DNA from: Macrostomum lignano
Lineage: Eukaryota
NCBI GenBank assembly: GCA_002269645.1
Contig: NIVC01002001.1
Coordinates: forward strand, 124,001-188,000
DNA length: 64,000 bases
Reading direction: 5' to 3'
The notes beneath the pieces were generated by a model. It had not been told where the DNA came from. It made no database searches and saw nothing but the letters and a program-made list of their open reading frames with translations. A program made the translations under genes and the position numbers. How positions within the stretch are numbered: the stretch's first letter is position 1; each line of letters opens with the position of its first letter. Below are positions 11,456 through 63,300 of this stretch, one piece after another.

Positions 11456-14400
11456 ATGGATTCCTTGGAGTCGAACGATGACCATTCACTGCAGCAGCCT
11501 GCGGGCACAGCAGGTGCCTACAGAGGCCTGAGCAGACCCATCGCCACCTACTCGCCGATGGGCGCAGCAGACAGTGGCTACCAGACTGATTCGCCAACCC
11601 CTGTCACTGCTGCCAACTCTTCAGCGACAAGTTACACCCCGCCGCCAGGCACCTTCAGGCCGGTGAGTCCGGCTGAGCAACCGGCAGGCCAGCTCCGCCA
11701 CGTGAGCACCCAGACCTCACTGACGGAGCAGATTCTGCAGCAACAACAGCAACAGCAGCCTCCGCCACCGCCGCCGCCTCTGTTGCTAAGCCAACAATCC
11801 ACGGGATTCCGGCCGGCATCGGCGCCTGTCTACGACCTTCCTGACGTCGGCGCCCGTGGTGGCGGCAGCGACGTTGGCGGAGCCTTCGGCGGCGGCGGCG
11901 TCGGAGGGATTGTGGAATTCGAAGTCGACGATCTCGATTCGGAATTCGACGAAGAAGTTTATCGAACTGCCGCTGGTGAGTTTGCTTGTTGAGGTTGTCA
12001 CAAAGGAAGGATGCAAGATTTTATAAACAATTTAAAATCGCGCCAAAATATTTAAAAAAATTAAAAATTTAAAAAGGGTTTTCAATCAACTATAGATAGT
12101 TTAATTTTTGAGTTTTTTAAAACCAATTTTCTTATGGAAAATTTCCGGCTTTTTTAAACCTTTGCTTAAATGCTTAATAAACGTAAGCTTAAAAAACAAA
12201 ACGGGATTGCAATCATTGATTGTTATTGTGAACGAAAATGCGAGTGAGTTCCGCCATTCTGCATTTTAGGGGACCCACGTGATCCGTTGCCATGGCAACT
12301 ATACGCTTTTGTTGCAACACTTAGTAGACAAGTTATACGCATTAGTGCATACAAAAGAAAGCACGTGATTCTCCACGTCTCTCTCTCCCTCCAGCCCTAG
12401 CTCCCGTCCCTTCTCTCGGTTCCAGACTAAATTTATCCTACACGTCATTCTCGACTTGGGCTTGAACCGAAGTGGGGTGGGGGACGCTCAGCCAGACAGG
12501 GCAGGCAGACAGAGAACTAATCAGAAGACCTCCATAGCTCAAATACTAGGCGAGGTCAATGATGAAGCGGGAGAGACTGAAGAGAAAGTAAAGGATGACG
12601 TCATTTTTCTGGCCCCAGCCAGAGTGTCTGCAGCGTGCTTGTCAGACGACTGACTACTGGGGAATCCCCCTAAATGCTGCTCTAAAAATAGCCACAATGG
12701 TCTGCGGTAGCCACTATGCATTAACAAAAAAAACCACCGTTTAAGTCTTCTTTAGTTTAGTGCAAGTGAACTTAAACCAAAGACAAGTATAAATTCAACT
12801 CTAACTGGGACTACGAAGGCGGGTTTTGCTCAGTTAGTCATAATTCCATGTTTTTTTCACTTGGGCGTGACAGAACTTTGCCGTATAGATATGAGGAATA
12901 ACTTACAACGGTCTAATAAGTGTAGTGGGTCACATGACATAGCTGGGTTAAATATTGCACTAGCTAGCATAGCTTGCCGCGCATTGCGTGTGGGCGGGAT
13001 TGGAGCATATGACTAAGTGCTTTGAATTGTTATTCTATTCTAACTGTTGCACAACCTATTCGCTTCTTAATTAGTTGGGATTGCGAAACACTTGGAGACA
13101 AAATAACTTGTTCAAAACTGGAGCACGTAGAGAAGATAAAGATGAAGGGAGCATATAAGATTGAGAGAAGTCTACGGGTAATCACTTTAATAGAAAGATA
13201 TAAAAGACAGAATAATCCCATACATAGGAACAGGGCAAAAGAAGCAGCCTGGAGTGAAGCAGAGGGAAGCAGGGAGAAGCCGGGAAAGAAGCAGGGAGAG
13301 AGAATCAGGGAGAGAGAAGCAGGGAGAGAGAAGCAGGGAGAGAAGCAGGGAGCTTGAAGGCTGAAGCAAGGAGAGAGAAGCGGGGAGAGAGAAGCAGGGA
13401 GAGAGAAGCAGGGAAAGAAGCAGGGAGAGAGAAGCAGGGAGAGAGAAGCAGGGAGAGAAGCAGGAAGGGAGAAGCAGGAAGGGAGAAGCAGGGAGAGAGA
13501 AGCGGGGAGAGAGAAGCAGGGAGAGAGAAGCAGGGAAAGAAGCAGGGAGAGAGAAGCAGGGAGAGAGAAGCAGGGAGAGAAGCAGGGAGAGAGAAGCAGA
13601 GAGAAGCAGGGAGAGAGAGAAGCAGGGAGAGAGAAGCAGGAAGGGAGAAGCAGGGAGGGAGAAGCAGTAAGGGAGAAGCAGGAAGGGAGAAGCAGGAAGG
13701 GAGAAGCAGGAAGGGAGAAGCAGGGAGAGAGAAGCAGGGAGAGAAGTAGGGAGAGAGAAGCAGGCAGAGAGAAGCAGAGAGAAGCAGGGAGAGAGAAGCA
13801 GGGAGAGAGAAGCACGAAGGGAGAAGCAGGAAGGGAGAAGCAGGCAGAGAGAATCAGAGAGAGAAGCAGGGAGAGAGAAGCAGGGAGGTAGAGGCAGATT
13901 CAAGAAACAATGAGCCAGCCAGAGACAGTCAGAGCCGCAGACAGACGGGCATATAACTTTCATAAAATAATAGATGTACATCATGATCCAGTCAAATGCC
14001 TTATACAATTCTTAACTTCTTAACTTTAATAAATGGACTTATGCAGCAATGAAACTTACAAAATCAAAAGATCCAAAAGCTAAAAATAGATTCCCAAGAA
14101 GGAAATCCTGAAATTTCCCCTTTCCAAATTTAGGCGACCAAATATATTTTAATAAAGTCCTCTCGGGCTCCCGCGCGACAGACAATAGTTAACTAATGAG
14201 CCTGCACAGAACACGAAGTGCATGTAAAATCTCTGTATAAATATGCGGCTTCAGTGTCTGACACAAACTGCCCAATTCCATTCGCAATGCTCTATTCGTT
14301 AATAACAATAATTTCAGCTGCACAGAATCTGCAGCCGTTGCCTGATCTGCTACAGCGGCAGGCGGTGCCGAGTTCAGATTCTGGAGATGCTGTGAGGCTG

Positions 14401-17400
14401 AGAACTCGCTCAGTGCCGGTGCCGGACCTGGCCAGCAGGCACGAGAGGGTGGCGCTGCTGCTCAGGGAGATTGGGGATCAGTACAATCGGAGCAGGGGAC
14501 AGTCGCCCGCCGCTGCTGGGACCGCTGGAGGTGGAAGCGGTCGAGCCTCTCTGGTAAGTCTCTCGGCTGCTGCGGCTGGCAGATTTTTCTCTGCCTGCTT
14601 CTCTCCCTGCTTCTCTCCCTGCTTCTCTCTCCCTGCTTCTCTCCCTGCTTCTCTCCTTGCTTCTCTCTCCCTGCTTCTCTCTCCCTGCTTCCCTCTCCCT
14701 GCTTCTCTCTCCCTGCTTCTCTCCCTGCTTCTCTCTCCCTGCTTCTCTCTCCCTGCTTCTCTGCCTGATTTTCTCCCTGCTTCTTTCCCTGCTTCTCTCT
14801 CCCTGCTTCTCTGCCTGCTTTTCTCCCTGCTTCTCTCCCTGCTTCTCTCGCTTCCATTTCTGTCTCCTATCACTCGCCCAGCCCGATGACTCAACCTCAG
14901 CCCCTTAGACAGCCTTCGCAACTGCAGCGGCAGAGAACTGGAAAACACAATCTGCACCGAACTTCGCAGTCACAGCCAGCCGTCCCCTTCTCTCTCTCTC
15001 TCTCTCTCTCGGGACCCTCAATTTCACTCGCTCTTGCTTCATGCACTCTGCAAGTCCCGCGTTTCTCGGTGGGCCGTTTTCAGTCGGAGGTCAGGAAACT
15101 GGGACTATTAACAATTTGACTGCAAAGTTCCACCAAACTCTGCAATTTTCCTACCGCTTTCGTGCCTACCAAAAATGTAACGGTCTGTGTCTTCTCGTAG
15201 ATAGTGTCTCTTTAAATCTCTTATTCTATAGTTATTTTCATCGATTATTTGCAGCGGAGTTCGACCGTACCTATACCTATCTGTCTGCAGCTTTAAACGG
15301 TTTTCCCCACTGCAGTGTCTTTGTATTGAATGTAATGCCTCTAATCTCCTGGAACAAAGACTGCACAGAGACAGAATTCAGAGCGAATTTGGTCCGCGCT
15401 GAGCCAGTAAGCTTAGAACCACTCGGTGGCTGAAGGATTTCGATACAAAAAAATAGCAAGAGAAACGGAAGAAGAAGAAGGCGGTTGCGCTGTCTTCTGC
15501 TTTTTCTGTCTTTGCAGCTGCAAAAGCAGATCCAGAGTGGCAAAACTCGTTTCTGGGACAAGGGGGCTTAGATTACATACATCCTGTATGAGACCGTAGA
15601 CTGCCGCTGCTTATTTATGGGACTGGTGACCTCACATCCTTGTGCTTCGTCATGTTGATATTCCATGCTTTCTGGTGTTCAGACTGCCGCAATTTTGTTC
15701 ATGGATAAACTAATTTTCATCCATGTTGGCTAGATTAGCAATCCATTCTAAACTCATTTTCATTCATGTTGGCTAGATTAGCAATCCATTCTAAACTAAT
15801 TTTCATTCATGTTGGCTAGATTAGCAATCCATTCTAAACTAATTTTCATTCATGTTGGCTAGATTAGCAATCCATTCTAAACTAATTTTCATTCATGTTG
15901 GCTAGATTAGCAATCCATTCTAAACTCATTTTCATCCATGATGGCTAGATTAGCAATCCATTCTAAACTCATTTTCATTCATGTTGGCTAGATTAGCAAT
16001 CCATTCTAAACTCATTTTCATTCATGTTGGCTAGATTAGCAATCCATTTTCTAAACTAATTTTAATCCATGTTGGCTAGATTAGCAATCCATTCTAAACT
16101 CATTTTCATTCATGTTGGCTAGATTAGCAATCCATTCTAAACTCATTTTCATTCATGTTGGCTAGATTAGCAATCCATTTTCTAAACTAATTTTAATCCA
16201 TGTTGGCTAGATTAGCAATCCATTCTAAACTCATTTTCATTCATGTTGGCTAGATTAGCAATCCATTTTCTAAACTAATTTTAATCCATGTTGGCTAGAT
16301 TAGCAATCCATTCTAAACTAATTTTCATTCATGTTGGCTAGATTAGCAATCCATTCTAAACTAATTTTCATTCATGTTGGCTAGATTAGCAATCCATTCT
16401 AAACTCATTTTCATCCATGATGGCTAGATTAGCAATCCATTCTAAACTCATTTTCATTCATGTTGGCTAGATTAGCAATCCATTCTAAACTCATTTTCAT
16501 TAATGTTGGCTAGATTAGCAATCCATTTTCTAAACTAATTTTAATCCATGTTGGCTAGATTAGCAATCCATTCTAAACTCATTTTCATTCATGTTGGCTA
16601 GATTAGCAATCCATTCTAAACTCATTTTCATTCATGTTGGCTAGATTAGCAATCCATTTTCTAAACTAATTTTAATCCATGTTGGCTAGATTAGCAATCC
16701 ATTCTAAACTCATTTTCATTCATGTTGGCTAGATTAGCAATCCATTTTCTAAACTAATTTTAATCCATGTTGGCTAGATTAGCAATCCATTCTAAACTCA
16801 TTTTCATTCATGTTGGCTAGATTAGCAATCCATTCTAAACTAATTTTAATCCAGGTTGGCTAGATTAGCAATCCATTCTAAACTCATTTTCATTCATGTT
16901 GGCTAGATTAGCAATCCATTTTCTAAACTAATTTTAATCCAGGTTGGCTAGATTAGCAATCCATTCTAAACTCATTTTCATCCATGATGGCTAGATTAGC
17001 AATCCATTCTAAACTCATTTTCATTCATGTTGGCTAGATTAGCAATCCATTCTAAACTCATTTTCATTAATGTTGGCTAGATTAGCAATCCATTTTCTAA
17101 ACTAATTTTAATCCATGTCGGCTAGATTAGCAATCCATTCTAAACTCATTTTCATCCAGGTTGGCTAGATTAGCAATCCATTTTCTAAACTAATTTTAAT
17201 CCAGGTTGGCTAGATTAGCAATCCATTCTAAACTCATTTTCATTCATGTTGGCTAGATTAGCAATCCATTTTCTAAACTAATTTTCATCAATCTTGGCTA
17301 GATTAGCAATCCATTTTCTAAACTAATTTTCATCAATCTTGGCTAGATTAGCAATCCATTTTCTAAACTAATTTTCATCAATCTTGGCTAGATTAGCAAT

Positions 17401-19389
17401 CCATTTTCTAAACTAATTTTCATCAATCTTGGCTAGATTAGCAATCCATTTTCTAAACTAATTTTCATCAATCTTGGCTAGATTAGCAATCCATTTTCTA
17501 AACTCATTTTCATTCATGTTGGCTAGATTAGCAATCCATTCTAAACTCATATTCATTATTTCCATTTATCACTGGGCATTTAATCTCAATCCTCTTAACC
17601 TAATCTCTATGCCGTGCTGTCCAAATTTAGGATCAGCCGAGCTCAGATGAGCAACTCAACTCACTTCTTTAGCCATCTTGACTTTTGTGCATAGCAACCC
17701 ACTAATTTGGTTAACAAGGGCTGTTTAGAACGAGTAAGACCTATCTTACAAAGCATATTTATACAAAAGTAAAAAATAAAGTTTTAAGCAAAAGTTGTCT
17801 ATCGAAAAGGAGACGACACTTACTATTTAAGAATTTCTTTGTTAGAGATAGGAGAACCTGAGAGTGTTGAGTCATCCTGGAGTCTTGAAACAAAGTTATG
17901 GATGATATTGACACCTTCTGAGCTACAAGCCTTCGCTGAATCTGCGCTGCGATGCAAAAGCAAACAATTCCTAGCAAGGGGCCATTAAGAGAAGAGCTGT
18001 AATATATCATTCTTCTCTGGTGTTTTCTGCTATAGGATGCAAAGTAAGCTCATTTTTCACTCAAACCTACATACTACTCATGCTATCAGTAGGCTTTCAG
18101 TTTTCTATCAATAAGTTGATTCTGTGTTTAATCAAAATAATTTTTTATACGCTTCAAGTTATGTAGAATTTTTCATAAAAATAAAAAGAAATTGCAGTTC
18201 ATAAATAAACATGTAAATAAAAATAAATGGGAGAGATACACTCTCTATAAGAGATAGACAGAGAAGAGAAGAGGAGAGGACAGGAGAGATGAGAAAGGGA
18301 GAGAAGAGGAGAGGAGAGGAGAGAAGAGGAGAGGAGAGGAGAGGAGTGGAGAGAAGAGGAGAGGAGAGGAGAGAAGAGGAGAGGAGAGGAGAGGAGAGGA
18401 GAGAAGAGGAGAGGAGAGCAGAGAAGAGGAGTGGAGAGGAGAGGAGAGGAGAGGAGAGGAGAGGAGAGGAGAGGAGAGGTGAAAGAGAAGAAAAATGAGA
18501 GAAGAGGCGAGAGAGGAGGCAAGAGAGAGTAGAAAGAAGAGGCGAAAGAGTAGAGAGAAGAGGCGAAAGAGTAGAGAGAAGAGAGAAGAGAGGAGACAGA
18601 AGAGAGGAGAGAGAAGAGAGAAGAGAGAAGAGAGAAGACAGAAGAGAGGAGAGAGTAGAGAGAAGAGGGGAGAGAGAAGAGAGGAGAGAGTAGAGAGGAG
18701 AGAGAAGAGAGGAGAGAGTAGAGAGAAGAGAGAAGAGAGGAGACAGAAGAGAGGAGAGAGTAGAGAGAAGAGAGGAGAGAGTAGAGAGGAGAGAGAAGAG
18801 AGGAGAGAGTAGAGAGAAGAGAGAAGAGAGAAGACAGAAGAGAGGAGAGAGTAGAGAGAAGAGGGGAGAGAGAAGAGAGGAGAGAGTAGAGAGGAGAGAG
18901 AAGAGAGGAGAGAGTAGAGAGAAGAGAGAAGAGAGGAGACAGAAGAGAGGAGAGAGTAGAGAGAAGAGAGGAGACAGAAGAGAGGAGAGAGTAGAGAGGA
19001 GAGAGGAGACAGAAGAGTGGAGAGAGTAGAGAGAAGAGGGGAGAGAGAGCTGTGAAGAGACACAAACCCCGGTCAAAGGTTTCAAAGGACCCGAGGGCCG
19101 GATAGAGGTGTTTTGCGGTCCAGAGTTTGCCGATCCTTCACTAGAAGCAGACCTGTCATTTCACCCCCGCTCTCCCGCACCGCAGCAACTGTTCTCCCAC
19201 ACTCGCCGAGACCGAAGTCTGAGTCTTCGGACTGCCGAAATCGACCCCCTGCTGGGAGAGCGCGCGATGGGCGACGAGAACTGGCGCCAGTCAATCCTAG
19301 GCTGGGTGGCGCAGATGGCGCGCACTCTGTCAGGCGCTAATATTGCGCTAGATGACGAAGAAGGCGAACTTGAAGACGGCTATCAGTGA
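11456..19389 (+). CDS. BH3-only protein, Bim/Bmf-like architecture (319 aa, 3 exons)
   Basis: Exons 11456-11975 (G|GTGAGT, phase 1), 14318-14553 (TTTCAG|..CTG|GTAAGT, phase 0) and 19186-19389 (pyrimidine tract..CGCAG|) give 960 nt in frame. Motifs: DSGYQT (11570-11587), RHVSTQT (11696-11716), VALLLREIGDQYN (14449-14487), and a C-terminal amphipathic WRQSILGWVAQMARTL. Confidence 0.75.
12286..12299. promoter_or_regulatory. Perfect palindromic RFX X-box GTTGCCATGGCAAC in intron 1, next to CACGTG E-boxes (12277, 12362)
   Basis: Exact 14-bp match to the X-box consensus. Confidence 0.6.
13244..13885 (+). repeat. Purine-rich ~14-bp satellite (AGCAGGGAGAGAGA)n in intron 1
   Basis: Direct reading. 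It produces the spurious low-complexity ORFs 13030-13815, 13187-14008 and 13354-13749. Confidence 0.95.
14586..14848 (-). repeat. The same satellite in inverted orientation (TCTCTCTCCCTGCT)n in intron 2
   Basis: Reverse complement of the 13244-13885 unit; starts about 32 nt after the exon-2 donor. Confidence 0.95.
15706..17551. repeat. 43-45-bp minisatellite (CATGTTGGCTAGATTAGCAATCCATTCTAAACTCATTTTCATT), about 42 copies
   Basis: Tandem units with variant blocks; no unique spacers. Confidence 0.97.
18255..19045. repeat. Polypurine (GAGAA/GAGGA) low-complexity array just upstream of exon 3
   Basis: Direct reading. The Leu/Ser-rich ORFs 18159-19085, 18199-19065 and 18245-19063 are artefacts of it. 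Confidence 0.95.
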
Positions 19390-20539: not shown

Positions 20540-21128
20540 AGAAGAAGACATTTGGGAGACATTAGAAGAGTGAGACATGAGAGACTTGAGAGACATGAGA
20601 GACACATGAGAGACATGAGACACATGAGACACATGAGACACATGAGACACATGAGAAGACACGAGACACATGAGAAGACACATGAGACACATGAGAGACA
20701 CATGAAAGACATGAGAGACATGAGAGACACGTGAGAGGCATAAGAGACAAATGAGAGACATGAGAGAGATATGAGAGACATGAGAGACATGAGAGACACG
20801 TGAGAGAAATAAGAGACATGAGAGACACATGAGAGACATGAAGGACATGAAAAAGCATGAGAAAACATGAGACTCATGAGAGACATAAGGGACATGAAGG
20901 ACATGAAAAGACATGAGAAGACATGAGAGACATGAGAGACATGAGAAGACATAAGACACATAAGAAGACATAAGACACATGAGAGACATGGGGGAGGGAA
21001 ACACAAGAAGACACATGAGAGACATGAGAAGACATAAGACACATAAGACACAAGACACATGAGAGACATGGGGAGGGAAACACAAGAAGACACATGAGAG
21101 ACATGAAAAGACACATGATGAGACACAT
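20540..21128. repeat. GAGACAT/GACACAT-based low-complexity satellite
   Basis: Direct reading. Confidence 0.92.
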
Positions 21129-21584
21129 GGTACATTACATTCGACGTTGACAGATTTCTACTAAAGCAAAGGGTCTCTTTCTAATTTTTATTCATTCATT
21201 TGCAAGCGCAAAGCTACAACCAGTAAAACTCATTTCATTTTTCACAAAGTGGCTACTTGTACTCAGTCAGCTAAAACGATGCTAAGGAGAAAAGAATATA
21301 ACCGAAAATTTCTCAGACCAAATGAGGCACTCAAGTAAAACAAGTCTCACGGCATGCTATTGTAGATCTGCTCTATTTGTTAACTTTTATTTGTGATAAA
21401 ACTCTCAGCGAAGGAGAGGAAAGATGAGGTGAGCAGCAAATGGCTGCTGTAGAGTTGCACTGTATGCCACTGTGAGACACGTTTTTATGCTTTGATGAGG
21501 GTAGAATTGCAGGTAGATTAGAGGCAGATAAGATGCAGACGAGAGGTTGTTAAGAAGTTGGTGAAAAGTTGACGAGAGGTAGAT

Positions 21585-23181
21585 CAGAGGTAGATAATAA
21601 GTAGATAAGAGGTAGATCCGTGGTAGATCAGAGGTAGATCAGAGGTAGATCAGTGGTAGATCAGTGGTAGATCAGAGGTAGATCAGAGGTAGATCAGAGG
21701 TAGATCAGAGGTAGATCAGAGGTAGATCAGAGGTAGATCAGTGGTAGATCAGAGGTAGGTCAGAGGTAGATCAGAGGCAGATCAGAGGTAGATCAGTGGT
21801 ACATCAGAGGTAGATCAGACGTAGATCAGAGGTAGATCAGAGGTAGCTGATCGGAGGTAGATCAGAGGTACATCAGAGGTAGGTCAGTGGTAGATCAGAG
21901 GTAGATCAGAGGTAGATCAGAGGTAGCTGATCGGAGGTAGATCAGAGGTAGATCAGAGGTAGATCAGAGGTACATAAGAAGTAGATCAGAGGTAGATCAG
22001 AGGTAGATCAGAGGTAGATCAGAGGTAGAGATCAGAGGTAGATCAGTGGTAGATCAGAGGTAGATCAGAGGTAGATCAGAGGTAGATCAGAGGTACATCA
22101 GAGGTAGATCAAAGGTAGATCAGAGGTAGATCAGTGGTAGATCAGAGGTAGATCAAAGGTAGATCAGAGGTAGATCAGTGGTAGATCAGAGGTAGATCAG
22201 TGGTACATCAGAGGTAGATCAGAGGTAGATCAGAGGTAGATCAGAGGTAGATCAGTGGTAGATCAGAGGTAGATCAGAGGTACATCAGTGGTAGATCAGA
22301 GGTAGATCAGAGGTAGATCAGAGGTAGATAAGAAGTAGAACAGAGGTACATCAGTGGTAGATCAGTGGTAGAACAGAGGTAGATCAGTGGTAGATCAGTG
22401 GTACATCAGAGGTAGATCAAAGGTAGATCAGAGGTAGATCAAAGGTAGATCAGAGGTAGATCAGAGGTAGATCAGAGGTAGATCCGAGGTAGATCAGGGG
22501 TAGATCAGAGGTAGATCAGTGGTACATCAGAGGTAGATCAGAGGTAGATCAGAGGTAGATCAGAGGTAGATCAGAGGTAGATCAGAGGTAGATCAGAGGT
22601 AGATCAGTGGTAGATCAGTGGTAGATCAGAGGTAGATCAGAGGTAGATCAAAGGTAGATCAGAGGTAGATCAGAGGTAGATCAGAGGTAGATCCGAGGTA
22701 GATCAGAGGTAGATCAGAGGTAGATCAGAGGTAGATCAGAGGTAGTTCAGAGGTACATCAGTGGTAGATAAGAAGTAGAACAGAGGTAGATCCGTGGTAG
22801 ATCAGTGGTAGATCAGTGGTACATCAGAGGTAGATCAGAGGTAGATCAGAGGTAGATCAGAGGTAGATCAGAGGTAGATCAGAGGTAGATCAGTGGTAGA
22901 TCAGATGTAGATTAGAGGTAGATCCGTGGTAGATCAGAGGTAGATCAGAGGTACATCAGAGGTAGATCAGAGGTAGATCAGAGGTAGATCAGAGGTAGAT
23001 CAGAGGTAGAGCAGAGGTACATCAGAGGTAGATCAGAGGTAGATCAGAGGTAGATCAGAGGTAGATCAGAGGTAGAGCAGAGGTACATCAGAGGTAGGTC
23101 CGTGGTAGATCAGAGGTAGATCAGAGGTAGATCAGAGGTAGATCAGAGGTAGATCAGAGGTAGATCAGAGGTAGATCAGAG
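21585..23181. repeat. 11-bp satellite (AGAGGTAGATC)n, about 145 copies
   Basis: Clear 11-nt period. Confidence 0.97.
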
Positions 23182-24159: not shown

Positions 24160-25311
24160 ATGGCAGCGAGAAAGCTAGCCAAAGCGCCTGTTCCACCGCA
24201 GCAGCAGCAGCAGCAGCCGAAGCACCCGGCCCTAGAAGAGGTTGTCAGCTCCATAAGCTTTGGTGCCGAGAGCAGCAGCGACGGCGGTAGCGAAGTTGCC
24301 GACGTTCGACTTCGAGGACAGGCGAGCCGGATGGTCAGGGGCACAGTCACCGACTCGCAGCAACAGCAGCAGCAGCAGCGGCAGCAGTCCACTGACCAGC
24401 AACCGCGGCAGCGAAGGACCGCCTACATGCCAAACAAGGCGCCGCCACCGCCGCCGCCGCCACTGACGCAGCACCAGTCGCCAGCGAAGCCGCCGGAACG
24501 CCCCGCAAGCGCCAGCAGTGCCGCCACGATTGTGCACCAAACCGTGTACACCAGAGCGAAAGAGCCGGACAGCACCAGCCGCAGGACAAATCTGTTTGCT
24601 CCAACGCCTCGACCGCTGAGCCAGCAGCCGCAGCCATGGGCGGTCAATAATGGAAGTCTTTCAAGGAAGTTCTCGTCAGACAGTAGGCGCAGTCTGTATA
24701 TGCCAGGTCAACAAGCAGGAGGCGACGGCCACCGCGGCGGCGGTCACACACTCAAGGGCCGACTTACCAACCTGTTCCGACGCAAGAGTCGGAAGCCACT
24801 ACCTGAGCAGGAGCAGCAACGCTGGGCAGGAAATCAGACCTACTGGCAGCAGCAACAGCAACAGCAGCAGCAGAGGCAGCGCAGGCATTCTGGAGGCTCA
24901 ACACCAACGACCGCTTTTGCATCGCAGCAGCAGCAGCCGCCGCCGCCTCAGTCGCCGCACCAGCTGGCCAGTCGAAAGAGCTTGCACACCTTCACCTACA
25001 CGGATGCCAAGATTTACCATCCCAACAATAACATGCAGCACATTGCAGGGCCGGCCAATGTTAACCCTACCGCTAGTGCGGTTGCTACCCAGTCTCCGGG
25101 GCCTCGGATACTGAAAAGTCAGGCGCCGCAGCCTCCACCGCCGTCATCAACCTCGCCTGCGGCAGCAGAGGAAGATTCGTCCAACAGGAATACAGTGTGG
25201 TGGGACATGCGGACAATGGGAGCAACTCGCAGTGCCTACAGCACGGACGTACTGCTGGTCAGGAATCCGGAGCCGATGCCGGATTACGAGACCGAGACGA
25301 CTCGGTTCTGA
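24160..25311 (+). CDS. Uncharacterised intronless 383-aa Gln/Pro-rich protein ending in a class I PDZ-binding-like motif (ETTRF)
   Basis: Long GC-rich ATG ORF with poly-Q, poly-P, a basic patch (LFRRKSRK) and a more complex C-terminus (TVWWDMRTMG..LLVRNPEPMPDYETETTRF). Confidence 0.8.
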   Translation: MAARKLAKAPVPPQQQQQQPKHPALEEVVSSISFGAESSSDGGSEVADVRLRGQASRMVRGTVTDSQQQQQQQRQQSTDQQPRQRRTAYMPNKAPPPPPPPLTQHQSPAKPPERPASASSAATIVHQTVYTRAKEPDSTSRRTNLFAPTPRPLSQQPQPWAVNNGSLSRKFSSDSRRSLYMPGQQAGGDGHRGGGHTLKGRLTNLFRRKSRKPLPEQEQQRWAGNQTYWQQQQQQQQQRQRRHSGGSTPTTAFASQQQQPPPPQSPHQLASRKSLHTFTYTDAKIYHPNNNMQHIAGPANVNPTASAVATQSPGPRILKSQAPQPPPPSSTSPAAAEEDSSNRNTVWWDMRTMGATRSAYSTDVLLVRNPEPMPDYETETTRF

Positions 25312-27336: not shown

Positions 27337-30300
27337 TCACGAGAAATCTCTGTCCTGAAGTACAACGGGAGCCCAGAGGGTCCACACGTACAACAGTAGG
27401 CATAGCCAAGATGAAACCGTCTTAATCCACAGGGCGGCATTGTTGGTTTGCATAGTCTGCAGATTGGAGCTCGGGCTGTACCAGTTAGTGATGGTCATCA
27501 TTACGTACAGCGAGGCCAGGGCCAGCATCACGTGCAGCATGCAGTAGCTATAAGCAACGCATTCCTCTTCGTCGTTTACAATCGTTTGACCTTCCTTGTC
27601 CTGACCGCTAGAATTGTCATTAGTCTGTAAATTTACAAGAGATTGAAAGCGCCATGTTCTACTTTCGTCAGTAGGAGACAGGGGAATTATTTTTAAATAA
27701 AAGATTAATGTCGTTTGAATAAAAAAGGAAGGGTTTAAGTTGAAAGAAACTTAAAAGAAGGGTCCTCAGGGTAGCTACTCAAGGGTCCTCAGGGTGACTA
27801 CTTAAGGGTCCTCAGGGTGGCTACTCAAGGGTACTCAGGGTAACTACTCAAGGGTACTCAGGATAGCTACTCAAGGGTACTCAGGGTGGCTACTCAAGGG
27901 TACTCAGGATAGCTACTCAAGGGTACTCAGGATAGCTACTCAAGGGTACTCAGGATAGCTACTCAAGGGTACTCAGGGTAGCTACTCGAGGGTACTCAGG
28001 ATAGCTACTTAAGGGTACTCAGGATAGCTACTCAAGGGTACTCAGAGTATCTACTCAAAGGGTACTCAGGGTATTAGTTCTCACAAAGTCAGAATATAGC
28101 GGAAAAAAGAGTTTTAAAACAGAATAACAATGTAGACAAACAAAAATTCATACTTTCCAATTCGCTAAAATGCTGGGAACTTACTTCAACAGGCTCCAAA
28201 AGAATTGGATTTTCCATGCCATCCCGAGTCTAAAAAATTAATCAAAGCAAAAACAGTAAACTTCAAATTGAAACTGAAGAATAACTTGATTAAATAAACA
28301 ATTAACACAATAGGACTTGAATGAAACAATTTGAAACACCAAATAATTTCAAAGCTTACATTCATGTCTAATCGACCGACACTGCTATGAGCCGACGTGC
28401 GCAGGGTTGAGTACAGCACGGCCACAATGAACACGGCAAGAGTTGCCCAAGTCTGAAGTTCGAATCCCACTCCGACAGAGGTCTCACTGTGTTTACTGCT
28501 ACCTTCGGGACTGTGCCGAGTGTAATTGTTCAACGTGAGTGTCGGGTTGCAGGCTGGCAGAGTGCTGGAACTCACTGCAGACCAGGTCAGGTACATCACG
28601 TATAGAGAGATGAGGCCGCCCTGAAGCAGGCCGGAGCGCTGGTGCTCCTGAACTGCCGGCAGCACCGACATGGCGCTGGCAATGATGCAGAAGATCAGAT
28701 TCACCGAGATGAGGGCTTGGTTTGTGACGCATAGGGCTGCGGGATTGGAGGGTAACGTTAATTCAGTTGAGAATGTATGGAGGTATTATTGAGTACACAG
28801 GGCTTCAGGAGGCTGCTCATGTCGCTTCAGGAGGCTGCTCATGTCGCTTCAGGAGGCTGCTCATGTCGCTTCAGGAGGCTGCTCATGTCGCTTCAGGAGG
28901 CTGCTCATGTCGCTTCAGGAGGCTGCTCATGTCGCTTCAGGAGGCTACTCATGTCGCTTCAGGAAGCTACTCATGGCGCTTCAGGAGGCTGCTCATGTCG
29001 CTTCAGGAAGCTACTCATAATGATTCAGGAAGCTACTCGTGACGCTTCAGGAAGCTACTCATGGCGCTTCAGGAGGCTACTTATGACGCTTCAGGAAGCC
29101 AGCCCCTATCTCTTCAGGGAAGCCAGCCCCCATTCCTTCAGGGAAGCCAGCCCCCATTCCTTCAGGGAAGCCAGCCCCATTCCTTCAGGGAAGCCAGCCC
29201 CTATCTCTTCAGGGAAGCCAGCCCCTATCTCTTCAGGGAAGCCAGCCCTCATTCCTTCAGGGAAGCCAGCCCCCATTCCTTCAGGGAAGCCAGCCCCTAT
29301 CTCTTCAGGGAAGCCAGCCCCTATCTCTTCAGGGAAGCCAGCCCCCATTCCTTCAGGGAAGCCAGCCCCCATTCCTTCAGGGAAGCCAGCCCCTATCTCT
29401 TCAGGGAAGCCAGCCCCCATCCCTTCAGGGAAGCCAGCCCCCATTCCTTTATCTCTCACCATTAGCCCCGTAGTACACGTAGAGCAGGACAGTGAGCGCA
29501 ATAGCGGCAGAGTAGAACAGCACGGTGAAGAACAGCAGGCCGCAGTAGTACCAGTTACTGCCAGACTCTTCGTAGCCTTCTGTCCATCTTTCATTCCAAC
29601 AGTGAGCAAAGTCAATGAGCAGCACCAGCTGGATGATGATGAACAGCAGGCTGCCGCACATGCCGAAGATCATCCACACTGTGGTGAAGTCGCTGCTAGC
29701 CGGGATAAAGAATGCCCCGACCCACAGTAGGATGAGGGCCAACAGTTTGAAGAACCAGAAGCCGTTGTGCAGAGTGGCGCGAATGTCTCTGGGTGCATTG
29801 GGGCGAGAGGGGTGGAAGTCTCGTGACTGGCTGCTGGTGGGAGAGGCCGGTTCGAGGTGAACAGGAAATCAATGGGTAATAAAAAGAAACGTAGGGATGG
29901 TGGAAGGGAGAGATGAAGGGATGCTGGAAGGGAGAGATAAAAGGATGCTGGAAGGGACAGATGTAGTGATGATGGAAGGGAGAGATGAAGGGATGATGGA
30001 AGGGACAGCTGAAGGGATGATGGAAGGGAGAGATGAAGGGATGACGGAAGGGAGAGATGAAGGGATGATGGAAGGGCGAGATAAAGGTATGATGGAAGGG
30101 AGAGATGAAGGGATGGTGAAAGGGATATATGAAGGGATGATGGAAGGGAGAGATGAAGGGATGATGGAAGGGAGAGATGAAGGGATGATGGAAGGGAGAG
30201 ATGAAGGGATGATGGAAGGGAGAGATGAAGGGATGATGGAAGGGAGAGATGAAGGGATGATGGAAGGGAGAAATGAAGGGATGATGAAAGGGAGAGATGT

Positions 30301-31211
30301 AGTGATGATGGAAGAGAGAGATGAAGGGATGATAGAAGGGAGAGATAAAAGGATGCTGGAAGGGCGAGATGAAGGTATGATGGAAGAGAGAGATGAAGGG
30401 ATGATGAAAGGGATACATGAAGGGATGATGGAAGGGAGAGATGAAGGGATGATGAAAGGGATACATGAAGGGATGATGGAAGGGAGAGATGAAGGGATGA
30501 TGAAAGGGATACATGAAGGGATGATGGAAGGGAGAGATGAAGGGATGATGAAAGGGATACATGAAGGGATGATGGAAAGGAGAGATGAAGGGATGATGGA
30601 AGGGAGAGATGTAGTGATGATGGAAGAGAGAGATGAAGGGATGATGGAAGGGATACATGAAGGGATGATGGAATGAAGAAAAAGAAGTTGAAGGGATGAT
30701 GGAAGGGAGAGGTGAAGGAATGAAGAAGGGAGACAAAGGGATGATGGAAAGGAGAAATTTAAGGAAAAGACAACCAGAGATAATAAGGGCATATAAAGAT
30801 AAAAATCATGCGACTCTAAAAGTACACAGTCAAACGGACTCACTTGCTGTGCCTCACTTTAATAGTGAGCAGGGCCATCAGCACAAAGAACGCCGTGGCT
30901 CCGAACTCTACCCGATAGACCGCACCAAATCCAAGCACAAGATCGCAATTGAAGCCGCTCTTCACGCCTGTGTCAATTTTGCCAATCGACGTGTCGATCT
31001 TGTAGGTGTCGCACAGGGCTGGCACCTTGGCTAGAAGAGTTTTCATGCCTGGAGCCAGCATGATGCAGGACAGAATGGTGCTCAGCAGGAACAGCAGCGA
31101 GTACATCAGCCGAGTGGAGGTTGAGCTGCGGCATGAAGGACAAGCTGAGCAGCAGAGAGATGCGGCCGAGCTGCAGAAGCAGCAAGCCACTGTGCTGATG
31201 CAGCAGCCCAT
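27337..31211 (-). CDS. SERINC: Serine incorporator (SERINC/TDE) multipass membrane protein, 468 aa, 5 exons
   Basis: Exons 31211-30844, 29788-29460, 28736-28360, 28229-28185 and 27624-27337 total 1407 nt, all GT-AG and phase-consistent. Family motifs: MGCC..CC..CPSCRSSTSTRLMY, HNGFWFFK, QLVLLIDFAHCWNE, RSGLLQ..YVMYLTWSA, LASLYVMMTITNWYSP, WTLWAP. Confidence 0.95.
27762..28074. repeat. 23-bp minisatellite in SERINC intron 4
   Basis: GCTACTCAAGGGTACTCAGGATA tandem units. Confidence 0.93.
28801..29449. repeat. Two adjacent minisatellites (22-bp CTTCAGGAGGCTGCTCATGTCG; ~24-bp TTCAGGGAAGCCAGCCCCTATCTC) filling SERINC intron 2
   Basis: Direct reading; the two units share a CTTCAGG core. Confidence 0.93.
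29895..30750. repeat. 24-bp minisatellite (ATGGAAGGGAGAGATGAAGGGATG) filling SERINC intron 1
   Basis: Direct reading; explains ORFs 29696-30736, 29869-30843 and 29897-30676. Confidence 0.95.
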
Positions 31212-39181: not shown

Positions 39182-42100
39182 ACTGCCATTTGACATACTT
39201 AACCGCCTCTCTCTGACCCATAGAGTTACACATGACGTGATAATCGATAAAAAGTTTTTTTTCGATAGTAAACTGTAAAAACGTACCCTAAAAAACATTT
39301 TCAGCATTGGCGGTCAGGTCTCACTGAGCAAGCACACCACTATAGCTAGTACGTTAGCAAACAGTTTGGCATGATGTTTAGATTAAATTTGAATAGCTAT
39401 TGAAAATAAGAGAAAAAATCTATTTCACTTGCAGACGTGCTGAGGCACCAGAACTCCAATTTGTACGGCCACTCCACCGGCTCTGGCAAGGTGAGCAGCA
39501 GCAACTCCGTGCTGAACGTTGCCGAGCCCGGCAAGGTCGCTTCGTAAGTTCTTAAATTAATTAACAAGCTACCACTTTTTCTATCGTCTAAACTTGAGCT
39601 GATACTGACTAACTAACGAAGTGACTTCAGTGGTCCTTGATAAATAAACATAGCTACACTTAACAACATAAAAAATTCACCAAATTTTTTTAGCGACATG
39701 CCCGGACAAGCTAAGGAGCTGGTCAGAAGGCTGCAGTCTGACTCTAATGTGAACTTCAACAAGGATTGGAAGCTCATTACCCTGTTCATTGGTGGCAACG
39801 ATGTTTGCGACTACTGCAAGGACAAGGTGAGTGCCAGGTTCGTTAGCGTACGCAGATGGGGGACTTGAACTGCAGCCCCCTCCCAATCGTCCCTATATAA
39901 TTTCACTCCTCCAAGAACAAAATTAAAGATCGGTTAGGCCTACCAAGCTCGATGAATGACACCAGTTCGACTTTTGTCACCTCTTGGATCCGTGGCATCC
40001 ACTGGCCTAAGAATCAGGAGTAGAGGCGCCCACCAGGACGCCAAGTATTGGCATCCCTTAGCGTTGCGGCATCCTGTAATTGAAATGCCTGCGTAGTGCG
40101 AACGCCACCGTACTATAGGTTGTCGAATTGTCGGCGAACAGTAATATTATTTACAGTGCACGATGAGAACTCGTACTTTGAAGTTGAGAACAATTTGTCA
40201 CTTTCAACTAACCAGAACGAGTTTAGCGCAGACAACTACATCAGGTACATTCGCGAGGCACTCGACTATCTGCACGCCAATGTGCCCAGGGCTTTTGTCA
40301 ATGTTGCCGAAGTTCTGGATGTCTCCCTGGTCAAGGATCTGAAGGACGGCAGCTCGATCTGCCGGGTTCTGCAGGGCTCTTTTCTGTGCAAATGCGGCGC
40401 CATGCCGGAGAACGAGGCCGAGGAGCGCGAGATCCAGGCCATCATCGGCGAGTACCAGGCCCGACTCCGTCAGCTGGTCGACTCTGGCCGATACGACACT
40501 CGCGAGGACTTCACCGTGGTGACCCAGCCGTTCTTCAGGAACAGCAAGCCGCCAAAGATCAACGTGAGTACCTGTTGTTTTATTGGAAGCGAATGATAAA
40601 CTACGCTCAGGATGTGCTGAGGGTCAGCGGTATGCGGAATCGACATAGTTGCCTCACCGCTGCTTGTCTTAGGATGATGTAGTCGAAGGCGTAGCGCCGG
40701 GTGCTCACAACTCTCCTGCGAATATTTATATAATATTTTTTCCTCCAACAACTACTACTCAACTACATATTTTTATAAAATTGTGCACTCATTGACCTTA
40801 ATGTCAGGAGCCAGACGAAGAAAACCACAAAAAATATCTGCTTGAAAGTCTAGCGAAACCATAGTAAACTGACTTATGACAACGTTCGCAAACAGTAAAA
40901 ACATGTGTTCTTCGCAGCTCAAAATTTAAATTGCTTGAAACCAAATTTTCCCAATTCAGGGCAAGTACGACCAGTCCTACTTCGCTCCCGACTGCTTCCA
41001 CTTCAGCCGGAAGGGTCACGATGAGAGCGCCAAGGCTCTGTGGAACAACATGGTGAGTTATTTGTGCTCCTTAGGAAAGCACATGCAGTCACACACTGTG
41101 ATAGAAAATCAGACTATAGCTACCCTTGATACTAAATACCGCGCCAAATTTTCAGATCGAGCCGGTTGGACAGAAGTCGACCTCCTGGACTCCGAATGGC
41201 CCGTTCAAGTGCCCGACAAGTGTAAGTGTAGAAAAATTATGTTAGGGTGCACCTGCGAACGAATTTGTGAGCACGTACAGGTTTCAGGTGTCAGACTGCT
41301 TGCCCCTCACTGCTGGCTAAGGGTATCGTGAAAAGTTCCGGCAAACATTCATACATGCGACATAAACATCGGTTTTAATGTAAAAGTACCCCTTGTTCTG
41401 CGACGTCTAACTGGCTAAAAAAACTGTTTCAAAGTCGTCAGTTCGATTCACAGTTAATGCAAGTTTATATAAATTTTTGACGCTAATTTTTTTTCAGGCC
41501 CGGCCCTACCTGTCGACCAGAAAGAACTAAACCTGTCGATTTCAATGCCGTCGAAAGATTGATTGATTTTTTGCGCGGAAAACAACTGACTTAATCTAGA
41601 TGCGCCAACCGGCATCTTATCGGGAGTATTTTCACTGATTTTGGTCAGCGCAATGTCAAGATATTAAATTAAATATAGAGAGATACTAAATATGTGTTTT
41701 TCAAACTAAAATATTCCGCTTTTGTTTTAAACGTTTTTTTTTATTTTAAAATTTAAAACCGTTTGTATGTTAGTGCGTATTCACAAGAGCGATTAGCGGC
41801 CTGTGACCCAAATTAATTTGCACAATACTAACTGTGAACTTACTTGTTCATTCAAGACTTGCATTCAGAGCGATAAAGACGCTGTCTGTATATCAGTTGC
41901 CAAGCAACCAACAGAAGATCATTCAAAAAGCAAAATCACTGGATGGCAACAATCGATTAAAAAGATGGAACTGTCATGCGAAACTTGCAACCCTACATCC
42001 TGGACTTAAACGTATTAAACGACTTAAACGTATAAAGGTCTTATAAATAGAATCTTACAAATGCTTGCTATTAAAGTAGACTTGAAGAGATTACATAATC

Positions 42101-62841: not shown

Positions 62842-63300
62842 ATGTCGCTAATCATCCCGGGAAACTTCAAGCACATCATCCGCATATCCAACACTAACAT
62901 CGATGGCAAGGTGATGGCTCGGACAGCCTTCACTTCCATCAAGGGTGTGGGCAGGCGCTACTCTGACCTGGTGTGCAAGCGCGCCGGGATCTCGCGCGAC
63001 AGACGCGCCGGCCAGCTGTCCGACGACGAGATCGAGCAGGCGGTGACTATCATCATGAACCCGCAGCAGTTCAAGATCCCGCACTGGGTGCTGAACCGGC
63101 AGAAGGACATCAAGGATATGAAGCACCGGCACGTCATCAGCAACCAGCTGGACACTAAACTGCGCGAGGATCTGGAACGGCTCAAACGTGTGCGCGCCCA
63201 CCGGGGCCTGCGTCACTACTGGACCCTGCGCGTGCGCGGTCAGCACACCAAGACCACCGGCCGCCGCGGTCGCACCGTCGGAGTGTCCAAGAAGAAGTAA
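62842..63300 (+). CDS. RPS18: 40S ribosomal protein S18 (uS13), intronless CDS, divergent
   Basis: 152 aa from ATG 62842. [20 protein letters not shown] and [43 protein letters not shown] are present. Confidence 0.97.

What the first reader, a model, noticed from the sequence alone, without database searches (positions are those of the whole stretch)
11456..19389. Candidate invertebrate BH3-only apoptosis initiator with the full Bim-like motif set
Seen: a three-exon, phase-consistent 319-aa model. It is mostly low-complexity but carries, in order, DSGYQT, several S/T-P sites, RHVSTQT, VALLLREIGDQYN and an amphipathic C-terminal helix. Established: BH3 = hydrophobic-x3-L-x2-hydrophobic-G-D-x-hydrophobic (Bim IAQELRRIGDEFN); Bim and Bmf bind dynein light chain LC8 through (K/R)xTQT motifs; beta-TrCP recognises DSGxx(S/T); Bim has the order degron, TQT, BH3, membrane tail. 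BH3-only genes are easily missed by BLAST. Inference: a Bim/Bmf-like pro-apoptotic gene in a non-vertebrate, regulated by LC8 sequestration and phospho-degradation.
Basis: partly seen in the sequence, partly recalled or inferred. Interest (0 to 1): 0.85.

Follow-up and report, generated by a model that had tools for sequence, protein, structure and literature searches.

The report
Candidate flatworm BH3-only cell-death gene
This is a real, expressed but uncharacterised gene of the flatworm Macrostomum lignano whose disordered, lysine-free protein carries a very good copy of the short "BH3" death motif, so it may start cell death; but no relationship to vertebrate Bim or Bmf can be shown, and the function is untested.

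Summary
The three-exon model (11456-11975, 14318-14553, 19186-19389, + strand) has GT-AG introns. It translates to 319 aa identical to GenBank PAA61742.1, a Macrostomum lignano "hypothetical protein" from an RNA-seq-based annotation. A second genomic copy differs by 7 synonymous and 1 non-synonymous change (pN/pS 0.05), so the frame is under purifying selection.

VALLLREIGDQYN scores 17.7 bits on a matrix of 17 known BH3 motifs. That is mid-range for real BH3s and has a chance of 1.5e-4 per protein, but about 8 chance hits are expected per proteome. The motif sits in a predicted helix of an otherwise disordered, domain-free protein. RHVSTQTS breaks none of the published LC8-binding rules.

- **S/T-P sites:** these occur at chance frequency.
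- **DSGYQT:** this has a 4% chance of arising, and the protein has no lysine to accept ubiquitin.
- **C-terminus:** this is not a membrane anchor.
- **Bim/Bmf kinship:** none is detectable. Pfam gives nothing and hhalign aligns only the BH3 (9% probability).
- **Orthologues:** none exist in 1.84 billion representative proteins, so motif conservation could not be tested.

Verdict: a plausible (about 50%) new flatworm BH3-only candidate. It is not a demonstrated Bim/Bmf homologue.

The parts
11456..11975 (+). Exon 1 (aa 1-173 plus 1 nt). Disordered N-terminal part, with polyQ/polyP, a Gly-rich stretch and an acidic patch.
   Evidence: ORF from the first ATG after an in-frame stop, with a GT donor at 11976. 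Identical to PAA61742.1. AF2 pLDDT below 50 over nearly the whole exon.
11570..11587 (+). DSGYQT (aa 39-44). Matches the beta-TrCP degron regex DSGxx[ST].
   Evidence: Read directly. Occurs in 3.7% of composition-preserving shuffles. There is no lysine anywhere in the protein to accept ubiquitin.
11696..11719 (+). RHVSTQTS (aa 81-88). Candidate LC8/DYNLL-binding 8-mer with a TQT anchor.
   Evidence: Read directly. It violates none of the positional exclusion rules in PMC6607443: -5 R, -4 H polar, -3 V large enough, -2 S, +2 S not hydrophobic. The rule-compatible pattern arises in 1.3% of shuffles and bare TQT in 7.4%. The region is predicted disordered.
14318..14553 (+). Exon 2 (aa 174-252). 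The BH3-bearing exon.
   Evidence: AG acceptor at 14316-14317 and GT donor at 14554. Three synonymous and no non-synonymous differences from copy g2.
14449..14487 (+). BH3 core VALLLREIGDQYN (aa 218-230): h1 V, small A, h2 L, R, h3 I, G, D, h4 Y, N.
   Evidence: Scores 17.7 bits on a matrix built from 17 known BH3s, about 9th of 17 against their leave-one-out scores. P = 4.3e-7 per position. It is the only real hit in the six frames of the window. It is the top BLASTP HSP against human Bim: 7/13 identical, 10/13 similar, E = 0.028 for the pair.
14428..14493 (+). Predicted 22-residue helix LASRHERVALLLREIGDQYNRS (aa 211-232) enclosing the BH3.
   Evidence: AF2 helix H208-229 in P0001 numbering (equals 211-232 here), pLDDT about 50, flanked by residues with pLDDT below 50.
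19186..19389 (+). Exon 3 (aa 253-319 plus the TGA stop).
   Evidence: AG acceptor at 19184-19185 and phase 0. Two synonymous and one non-synonymous (R278G) difference from copy g2.
19276..19332 (+). C-terminal helix ENWRQSILGWVAQMARTLS (aa 283-301). Moderately hydrophobic, not a transmembrane segment.
   Evidence: AF2 helix H280-298 in P0001 numbering, pLDDT 50-57. Best 19-residue Kyte-Doolittle mean is 1.0 and the hydrophobic moment is 0.21.
19348..19386 (+). Acidic C-terminal tail DDEEGELEDGYQ with a second GYQ.
   Evidence: Read directly. An acidic end argues against a mitochondrial tail anchor.

Best explanation
Mlig012262 is a genuine, expressed M. lignano gene, present as two near-identical copies. 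It encodes a lysine-free, intrinsically disordered protein whose one strongly non-random feature is a canonical BH3 helix. The most likely mechanism (inferred, not shown) is that of a BH3-only death ligand. On a stress or developmental signal, the BH3 segment (aa 211-232) folds into an amphipathic helix in the groove of the worm's Bcl-2-like survival proteins and/or Bak. That releases or activates Bak, leading to outer-membrane permeabilisation, cytochrome c release and Apaf-1/caspase activation, the pathway already documented in planarians and schistosomes. Docking of RHVSTQTS onto the LC8 dimer is a plausible second layer that would dimerise or sequester the protein. Its ancestry is open. 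It is either a lineage-specific BH3-only protein whose motifs arose independently, or a homologue diverged beyond detection. It should not be called Bim or Bmf. Shown here: the gene model, expression-based annotation, purifying selection, disorder, motif quality and lack of other domains. Inferred: binding, killing and LC8 regulation.
For: Gene reality:
- The product is identical to PAA61742.1, from an RNA-seq-based annotation.
- 7 synonymous against 1 non-synonymous difference between copies, pN/pS 0.05, binomial P = 5e-4.
- GC is 62.5% in exons against 40-44% in introns.

BH3:
- 17.7 bits, mid-range of real BH3s, with P = 1.5e-4 per protein.
- Every key position fits: hydrophobic h1-h4, a small residue after h1, and invariant L, G and D.
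- The BH3:BH3 alignment is the best HSP against Bim and the only hhalign match.

Context:
- No Pfam domain, whole protein or fragments.
- AF2 mean pLDDT is 41.9, with a helix exactly over the BH3.
- The BH3 lies on a single exon, as reported for other BH3-only genes (PMC8998228).
- In the human proteome, chance BH3-like binders almost all lie inside folded domains. The rare disordered ones stood out (PMC4072508).

Pathway and LC8:
- Flatworms keep Bak, Bcl-2-like proteins and Apaf-1, and schistosomes have BH3-only proteins.
- The LC8 motif passes the published rules.
Against: - BH3 is a degenerate short linear motif, and sequence patterns have poor predictive value (PMC9171138). Under a random-sequence (i.i.d.) background model, about 8 hits at 17.7 bits or better are expected in a proteome of roughly 44,000 non-redundant genes. 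This assumes about 400 aa per protein, and real sequences probably give more.
- No orthologue was found anywhere, so conservation of the motif is untested. The two copies are too similar to inform.
- There is no detectable similarity to the schistosome BH3-only proteins, to Bim or to Bmf.
- The AF2 model used a single sequence and is of low confidence.
- No binding or complex prediction could be run.
- The supporting motifs were picked post hoc by a reader looking for Bim features.
Confidence: 0.5

Rival explanations
1. This is a lineage-specific disordered protein with an unrelated function, for example a signalling scaffold or transcriptional co-factor with Q/P-rich and acidic segments. The BH3-like, TQT and DSG matches are chance short motifs that a motif-hunting reader assembled into a Bim-like story.
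For: About 8 chance BH3-grade hits are expected per proteome. BH3 patterns are known to over-predict. TQT arises in 7.4% of shuffles, DSGxx[ST] in 3.7%, and S/T-P sites are at chance. There are no homologues and no family hits. The sayonara paper itself treats the first BLAST resemblance to BIK as fortuitous.
Against: The BH3 match satisfies all nine informative positions at once and sits in the only long predicted helix of a disordered, domain-free protein. That is the context which separates real BH3-only proteins from chance hits. An LC8-rule-compatible TQT co-occurs upstream (1.3% by chance).
Confidence: 0.33
2. This is a true, highly diverged orthologue of the vertebrate Bim/Bmf lineage. 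An LC8-tethered BH3-only sensor was then already present in the bilaterian ancestor.
For: The order of elements is the same as in BimEL: SGY-type Ser-rich site, then TQT, then BH3, then C-terminal helix. The BH3 is closest to Bim's, at 7/13 identical. Bim is also very lysine-poor, with two K in 198 aa. The BH3 is on its own exon, followed by an exon for the C-terminal helix.
Against: There is no Pfam Bim_N, Bclx_interact or BMF hit, even with fragments. hhalign gives 9% probability, with only 20 aligned columns. BLASTP against Bmf finds nothing. The conserved K of DK(S/A)TQT is absent. The C-terminus differs in character, with an acidic end against Bim's basic hydrophobic end. The exon 2/3 boundary lies 22 residues after the BH3, against about 6 in Bim (inferred from the isoform break at about residue 166). 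Published searches found Bim/Bmf-like genes only in deuterostomes with any confidence.
Confidence: 0.08
3. This is a BH3-containing protein that does bind Bcl-2 family members but is not a death initiator. It could be an autophagy-type (Beclin-like) or inhibitory BH3 ligand, or a client whose main biology runs through LC8.
For: Non-canonical and even anti-apoptotic BH3-only proteins are described (abstract of 10.1101/2022.07.24.499430). At 319 aa the protein is large, with extra conserved-looking segments (acidic patch aa 152-170, C-terminal helix) of unknown role.
Against: There is no similarity to Beclin, BNIP or any such family. The BH3 is of the high-affinity Bim/Bak type rather than the weak Beclin type (17.7 against 11.9 bits).
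Confidence: 0.08
4. This is not a protein-coding gene, and the model is an annotation artefact in repeat-rich DNA.
For: The introns and flanks are full of tandem repeats, and long spurious ORFs occur in them.
Against: 7 of 8 substitutions between copies are synonymous and the only indel is in frame. The annotation is transcript-based. There is a sharp exon/intron GC contrast. A third database entry (224 aa) spans both junctions.
Confidence: 0.01

Closest known systems
Vertebrate Bim (BCL2L11; Pfam PF06773 Bim_N + PF08945 Bclx_interact)
   Same: - A disordered, lysine-poor protein.
- The BH3 is closest in sequence: IAQELRRIGDEFN against VALLLREIGDQYN.
- A TQT site lies upstream of the BH3 and a Ser-Gly-Tyr site upstream of that.
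- The BH3 is on its own exon, and a helix is encoded by the last exon.
   Different: - No profile or pairwise similarity outside the BH3.
- No Lys before TQT.
- The C-terminus is acidic and only mildly hydrophobic, rather than a basic hydrophobic membrane-binding segment.
- 319 aa against 198 aa, with polyQ/polyP/Gly-rich inserts.
- The intron after the BH3 is at a different distance.
Vertebrate Bmf (Pfam PF15185)
   Same: An LC8-type TQT site plus a BH3. From memory, a C-terminal hydrophobic helix followed by a polar/acidic tail. This last point is a lead only.
   Different: BLASTP finds nothing and there is no Pfam hit. The C-terminal resemblance I suspected (NLALNGEEN against NIALDDEEG) was not recovered by any alignment tool.
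Schistosome BH3-only proteins (Lee et al. 2011 PNAS, as summarised in PMC8998228 and PMC7022251)
   Same: The same phylum and the same presumed pathway: a tripartite Bcl-2 / Bak / BH3-only system leading to cytochrome c release.
   Different: phmmer of the M. lignano protein against 1.84 billion representatives, which draw on NCBI proteins, found no flatworm relative at all. Any relationship is therefore undetectable by sequence. The schistosome sequences themselves were not available to me for a direct alignment.
Drosophila Sayonara (CG14044) and candidate echinoderm BH3-only proteins
   Same: These are precedents for invertebrate BH3-only proteins recognised only by the motif. They are of similar size (350-373 aa for the echinoderm candidates) and are thought to have acquired the BH3 independently.
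   Different: Sayonara belongs to a conserved coiled-coil family and has experimental proof of BH3-dependent killing. The M. lignano protein has neither a family nor experiments.
LC8/DYNLL client motifs (LC8Hub; Jespersen et al. 2019)
   Same: An 8-mer in a disordered region with a TQT anchor, a polar -4 residue, a -3 residue at least as large as Val, and a non-hydrophobic +2 residue.
   Different: It lacks the favoured K/R at -3 and the favoured P/D/E at +2, so it is predicted permissible rather than strong. There is a single site only.

Membership tests
BH3-only proteins (functional class) | BH3 core: hydrophobic-x3-Leu-x2-hydrophobic-(Gly/Ala/Ser)-Asp-x-hydrophobic | tested here: met
   VALLLREIGDQYN at aa 218-230. 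It scores 17.7 bits on a 17-motif matrix, within the range of real BH3s (3.6-30.4, median about 17.7). P = 4.3e-7 per position.
BH3-only proteins (functional class) | No BH1, BH2 or BH4 motif and no Bcl-2 fold | tested here: met
   No Pfam hit of any kind at E up to 10, for the whole protein and six fragments. AF2 shows no globular domain.
BH3-only proteins (functional class) | BH3 lies in an accessible, disordered context and can form an amphipathic helix | tested here: met
   AF2 gives mean pLDDT 41.9, with 260 of 316 residues below 50. Helix 211-232 covers the BH3. This was a single-sequence prediction, so confidence is modest.
BH3-only proteins (functional class) | BH3-dependent binding to Bcl-2 family proteins and induction of apoptosis | not testable with these tools
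BH3-only proteins (functional class) | Motif conserved in orthologues | not testable with these tools
   The only relatives found are the two near-identical M. lignano copies and a fragment. None of the 8 substitutions between the copies falls in a motif, but the divergence of about 3% is too low to be informative.
Bim (PF06773 Bim_N, PF08945 Bclx_interact) | Significant match to the family profiles or alignment | tested here: not met
   hmmscan finds no hit. hhalign against a 17-species Bim alignment gives 9% probability, with only the 20 BH3 columns aligned.
Bim (PF06773 Bim_N, PF08945 Bclx_interact) | C-terminal hydrophobic membrane-binding segment at the extreme C-terminus | tested here: not met
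   Maximum 19-residue hydropathy is 1.0. The helix ends 18 residues before an acidic C-terminus. Compare the invariant LRLL..I.R..WR end of Bim.
Bmf (PF15185) | Significant match to the family profile or sequence | tested here: not met
   No Pfam hit.
LC8/DYNLL-binding clients | TQT anchor with permissive flanks in a disordered region | tested here: met
   RHVSTQTS checked against the positional rules of PMC6607443. It arises in 1.3% of shuffles. Predicted disordered.
LC8/DYNLL-binding clients | Measured or modelled binding to LC8 | not testable with these tools
   No complex prediction was possible. The cited paper notes that many TQT peptides do not bind.
SCF-beta-TrCP substrates | DSGxx(S/T) phosphodegron | tested here: inconclusive
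   DSGYQT is present but arises in 3.7% of shuffles. Phosphorylation is unknown.
SCF-beta-TrCP substrates | Acceptor lysine(s) near the degron | tested here: not met
   There are no lysines in the 319 residues. P = 4e-4 given the CDS base composition.
Tail-anchored mitochondrial proteins | Transmembrane segment of about 18-22 hydrophobic residues at the C-terminus with basic flanks | tested here: not met
   No window reaches the usual transmembrane hydropathy (maximum 1.0). The C-terminal 13 residues carry seven acidic and no basic residues.

The most novel reading that the evidence does not exclude
The protein is a functional, LC8-tethered BH3-only death sensor in a free-living flatworm. It would be either an ancient Bim/Bmf-lineage gene, pushing LC8-sequestration control of apoptosis back to the bilaterian ancestor, or a striking convergent re-invention of the same TQT-plus-BH3 logic. 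Complete avoidance of lysine would be an added way to escape ubiquitin-mediated turnover.
Probability: 0.15. Interest if true: 0.75.

Novelty: new member of a known kind. Interest (0 to 1): 0.45.

Why it matters
BH3-only proteins are the stress sensors that decide when the mitochondrial death pathway fires. They are almost invisible to homology searches. Outside vertebrates, C. elegans, Hydra, schistosomes and recently Drosophila, hardly any are known. M. lignano is a regeneration and stem-cell model with working transgenesis and RNAi. A validated BH3-only gene there would give a handle on how neoblast and germ-cell death is triggered, for example after irradiation or starvation. If the TQT site also proved functional, it would bear on whether LC8 tethering of death ligands is ancient or convergent. 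As it stands, the finding turns an anonymous "hypothetical protein" into a specific, cheaply testable hypothesis. It does not yet change what is known.

Tried and rejected
1. **Homologue searches.** The full protein by word-indexed search found only the second M. lignano copy. Exons 2-3 alone found nothing. Exhaustive phmmer against 1.84 billion representatives found only itself.
2. **Pfam.** Scans of the whole protein and six fragments at E up to 10 found nothing relevant.
3. **PDB.** A phmmer search with the 34-aa BH3 region found nothing at E up to 10, because the query is too short for this method.
4. **Bmf C-terminus.** My own idea was that the C-terminus resembles Bmf (WWQILL...NLALNGEEN). 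BLASTP did not recover it, so I dropped it as evidence.
5. **Bim degron region.** I also wondered whether DSGYQTDSPTP aligns with Bim SSGYFSFDTDRSPAP. Neither BLASTP nor hhalign recovered it, so I dropped that too.
6. **Invertebrate Bim relatives.** The last homologue search used human Bim, hoping for invertebrate Bim-like bridges. Only the best 120 hits are listed and all are amniotes. It served only to verify the Bim sequence and build the profile.
8. **Third database entry.** A look-up of the 224-aa entry for transcript contigs found it not on record.
9. **Literature.** A search for Mlig012262 found no paper. Lee et al. 2011 and the Aouacheria 2013 and 2015 reviews are not held.
10. **Foldseek.** Not run, because the model's confidence is too low for matches to mean anything.

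Full report
**What is there**

The window is genomic DNA of the free-living flatworm Macrostomum lignano. Window 1456-29389 is base-for-base identical to GCA_002269645.1 contig NIVC01002001.1:125456-153389.

They join in frame into 960 nt, and every intron is GT...AG. The ATG at 11456 is the first start codon after an in-frame stop nine codons upstream.

The 319-aa translation is exactly GenBank PAA61742.1, "hypothetical protein BOX15_Mlig012262g1". A second copy, g2, is 316 aa and sits on contig NIVC01000667.1 with the same exon structure. [quoted passage not shown] The two proposed junctions therefore already rest on transcript evidence. A third database entry, a 224-aa fragment, also spans both junctions.

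**Is it really coding?**

The two genomic copies are colinear through exons, introns and flanks at about 91-98% identity. This fits the known chromosome duplication in the sequenced DV1 line.

Within the CDS the copies differ by eight substitutions, seven synonymous and one non-synonymous (R278G). There is also one in-frame 12-nt change in the polyQ run. By Nei-Gojobori counting, pS = 0.028, pN = 0.0014 and the ratio is 0.05. The binomial probability of at least 7 of 8 changes being synonymous is 5e-4. The CDS is 62.5% GC, against 40-44% for the introns. The reading frame is therefore under purifying selection, and the "not a gene" reading can be dismissed.

**The protein**

No Pfam family matches the whole protein or any of six fragments at E up to 10. 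A single-sequence AlphaFold2 model has mean pLDDT 41.9, with 260 of 316 residues below 50. It predicts three helices, given here in the numbering of the window's protein:
- a short one at aa 165-172;
- a 22-residue helix at aa 211-232, which encloses the BH3 match;
- a helix at aa 283-301 near the C-terminus.

The protein is thus a domain-free, largely disordered chain. It is rich in Ala, Gly, Ser, Pro and Gln, and strikingly has no lysine and no cysteine. From the CDS's own position-specific base composition, lysine should make up 2.4% of residues, so the probability of none in 319 is 4e-4. The neighbouring Q/P-rich 383-aa ORF has 13 lysines.

**The BH3 match**

The Bim core was later verified.

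- VALLLREIGDQYN scores 17.7 bits. This is about ninth of 17 against the leave-one-out scores of the real motifs, which range from 3.6 to 30.4. It is level with Bcl-xL, Hrk and Bmf, and above Bid, Bad, Noxa and EGL-1.
- The exact tail probability is 4.3e-7 per position. That gives 1.5e-4 for a protein of this length and composition, and 0.03 for all stop-free 13-mers in the six frames of the window. The only other six-frame 13-mer above 8 bits was a low-complexity string.
- Every informative position fits: h1 Val, a small Ala after it, h2 Leu, Arg, h3 Ile, Gly, Asp, aromatic h4, Asn.
- In a blind BLASTP against human Bim, the best HSP is precisely BH3 on BH3 (7/13 identical, 10/13 similar, pairwise E = 0.028).

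The caution is the size of the proteome. With about 44,000 non-redundant genes, and assuming about 400 aa per protein, the random-sequence (i.i.d.) background model alone predicts roughly eight hits of this quality. The literature stresses that BH3 is a degenerate short linear motif whose patterns over-predict (PMC9171138).

What raises the odds is context. In the human proteome, BH3-like peptides that bind survival proteins but have no known death role are almost all buried in folded domains. Disordered examples were rare exceptions (PMC4072508). Here the motif is in the main predicted helix of a disordered, domain-free protein. It is encoded on a single exon, as reported for other BH3-only genes (PMC8998228).

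**The other motifs**

- **RHVSTQTS (aa 81-88).** I checked it against the positional rules of Jespersen et al. (PMC6607443). The TQT anchor is intact. Position -4 (His) is polar, -3 (Val) is "at least as large as valine", -2 (Ser) is not bulky, +2 (Ser) is not hydrophobic and -5 is basic. No exclusion rule is broken, although the favoured Lys/Arg at -3 and Pro/Asp/Glu at +2 are missing. A rule-compatible pattern arises in 1.3% of composition-preserving shuffles and bare TQT in 7.4%. The same paper warns that many TQT peptides do not bind. LC8 binding is plausible but not shown.
- **DSGYQT.** It fits the beta-TrCP regex but arises in 3.7% of shuffles (9.4% with the looser spacing). The protein offers no lysine to ubiquitylate, which fits poorly with canonical SCF-mediated degradation.
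- **S/T-P sites.** The six sites match the shuffle expectation (mean 4.4, P = 0.26) and carry no information.
- **C-terminal helix.** Its best 19-residue hydropathy is only 1.0 and its hydrophobic moment is low, at 0.21 against 0.60 for the Bim tail. It is followed by DDEEGELEDGYQ. It is not a tail anchor, and "amphipathic" is generous.

**Is it Bim or Bmf?**

No test supports kinship.
- The Pfam models for Bim_N, Bclx_interact and BMF are silent.
- I retrieved the Bim family, which also confirmed my recalled human sequence at 100% identity, and aligned 17 mammals and reptiles. hhalign against the flatworm protein aligns only 20 columns around the BH3, with 9% probability.
- BLASTP against human Bmf finds nothing.
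- Two resemblances I thought I saw by eye were not recovered by any aligner and are discarded. These were Bim SSGYFSFDTDRSPAP against DSGYQTDSPTP, and Bmf NLALNGEEN against NIALDDEEG.
- The shared order of elements (Ser-Gly-Tyr site, TQT, BH3, C-terminal helix) is real but consists of short motifs in disordered sequence.

BH3-only proteins are widely regarded as polyphyletic, with motifs that arise by convergence. An independent origin is therefore at least as likely as extreme divergence.

**Orthologues**

None could be found. The word-indexed search of 5.8 billion proteins and an exhaustive phmmer scan of 1.84 billion cluster representatives returned only the M. lignano copies. The library draws on NCBI proteins, so the parasitic flatworm proteomes are probably covered. 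If so, the protein is also not detectably related to the schistosome BH3-only proteins described by Lee et al. 2011 (summarised). I could not obtain those sequences for a direct comparison. Genomes of M. cliftonense and M. hystrix exist and are the obvious place to run it.

**Biological plausibility**

Flatworms retain a single Bak, a few Bcl-2-like proteins and Apaf-1. Cytochrome c release and BH3-peptide-triggered permeabilisation have been shown in planarians and schistosomes. A BH3-only ligand is therefore expected in M. lignano, and none has been named. A literature search for the locus tag found nothing.

**Weighing it**

- From the motif alone, the odds are somewhat against. A handful of true BH3 genes stand against roughly eight or more chance hits per proteome.
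- The disordered, domain-free, helix-over-motif context favours a genuine BH3-only protein several-fold.
- An LC8-compatible TQT adds a further modest factor, discounted because it was chosen after the fact.
- I settle on about 0.5 that this is a functional BH3-only-type ligand of the worm's Bcl-2 family proteins.
- Within that, I put about 0.3 on a functional LC8 site, about 0.1 on a functional degron, and under 0.1 on true Bim/Bmf orthology.
- The main rival, at about 0.33, is a lineage-specific disordered protein of unrelated function carrying chance motifs.

A direct in-silico docking test was not possible, because the structure tool refuses sequences from outside the session.

**Verdict**

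If confirmed, it would be a new member of a known kind (invertebrate BH3-only proteins) in a tractable regeneration model, with a possibly interesting LC8 link and an unusual lysine-free composition.

Noticed in passing
window 11456-19389 (the CDS): The 319-aa product contains no lysine and no cysteine. Given the CDS base composition, P(no Lys) is about 4e-4, and the neighbouring disordered ORF has 13 Lys. A 'lysine desert' would protect the protein from canonical ubiquitylation. Vertebrate Bim is also lysine-poor, with 2 K in 198 aa.
   Followed up: partly
window 11570-11587 and 19372-19386: The tripeptide GYQ occurs twice in acidic context: DSGYQT near the N-terminus and EDGYQ at the very C-terminus. 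This might be a repeated short motif rather than a degron. About 0.07 occurrences are expected by composition.
   Followed up: no
window 13274-13887, 14587-14849, 15706-17557, 18260-19048, 20568-21125, 21575-23181: The introns and 3' flank are packed with tandem arrays. A 14-bp GAGAAGCAGGGAGA array (45 copies) lies in intron 1, and its reverse complement starts 34 bp after exon 2. Intron 2 holds a 43-bp array of 42 copies and a purine-rich 21/35-bp array that ends about 140 bp before exon 3. Downstream there is an 11-bp array of 145 copies. These create long spurious ORFs on both strands.
   Followed up: partly
L001 (NIVC01000667.1) against window 2415-27661: A second, colinear copy of the whole neighbourhood is 91-98% identical, with array-length differences. 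It fits the duplicated large chromosome of the DV1 line. In that copy the gene starts ATGATG (an extra Met) and has four fewer Gln.
   Followed up: yes
window 24160-25311 (+): A single-exon 383-aa annotated gene encodes another Q/P-rich, low-complexity 'hypothetical protein' with no Pfam hit on record, 4.8 kb downstream of the candidate.
   Followed up: no
window ~27340-31210 (-): A Serinc (PF03348) gene, identified from the Pfam annotation recorded for that locus.
   Followed up: no
window ~40080-41330, 47650-48310, 54690-55460 (+) and 62779-63297 (+): There are repeated ORF pieces that look like GDSL-lipase / phospholipase-B-type exons (for example GGNDVCNYC and [12 protein letters not shown]), possibly tandem paralogues. 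A ribosomal protein S18/uS13-like ORF lies near the window end. These were judged by eye only.
   Followed up: no
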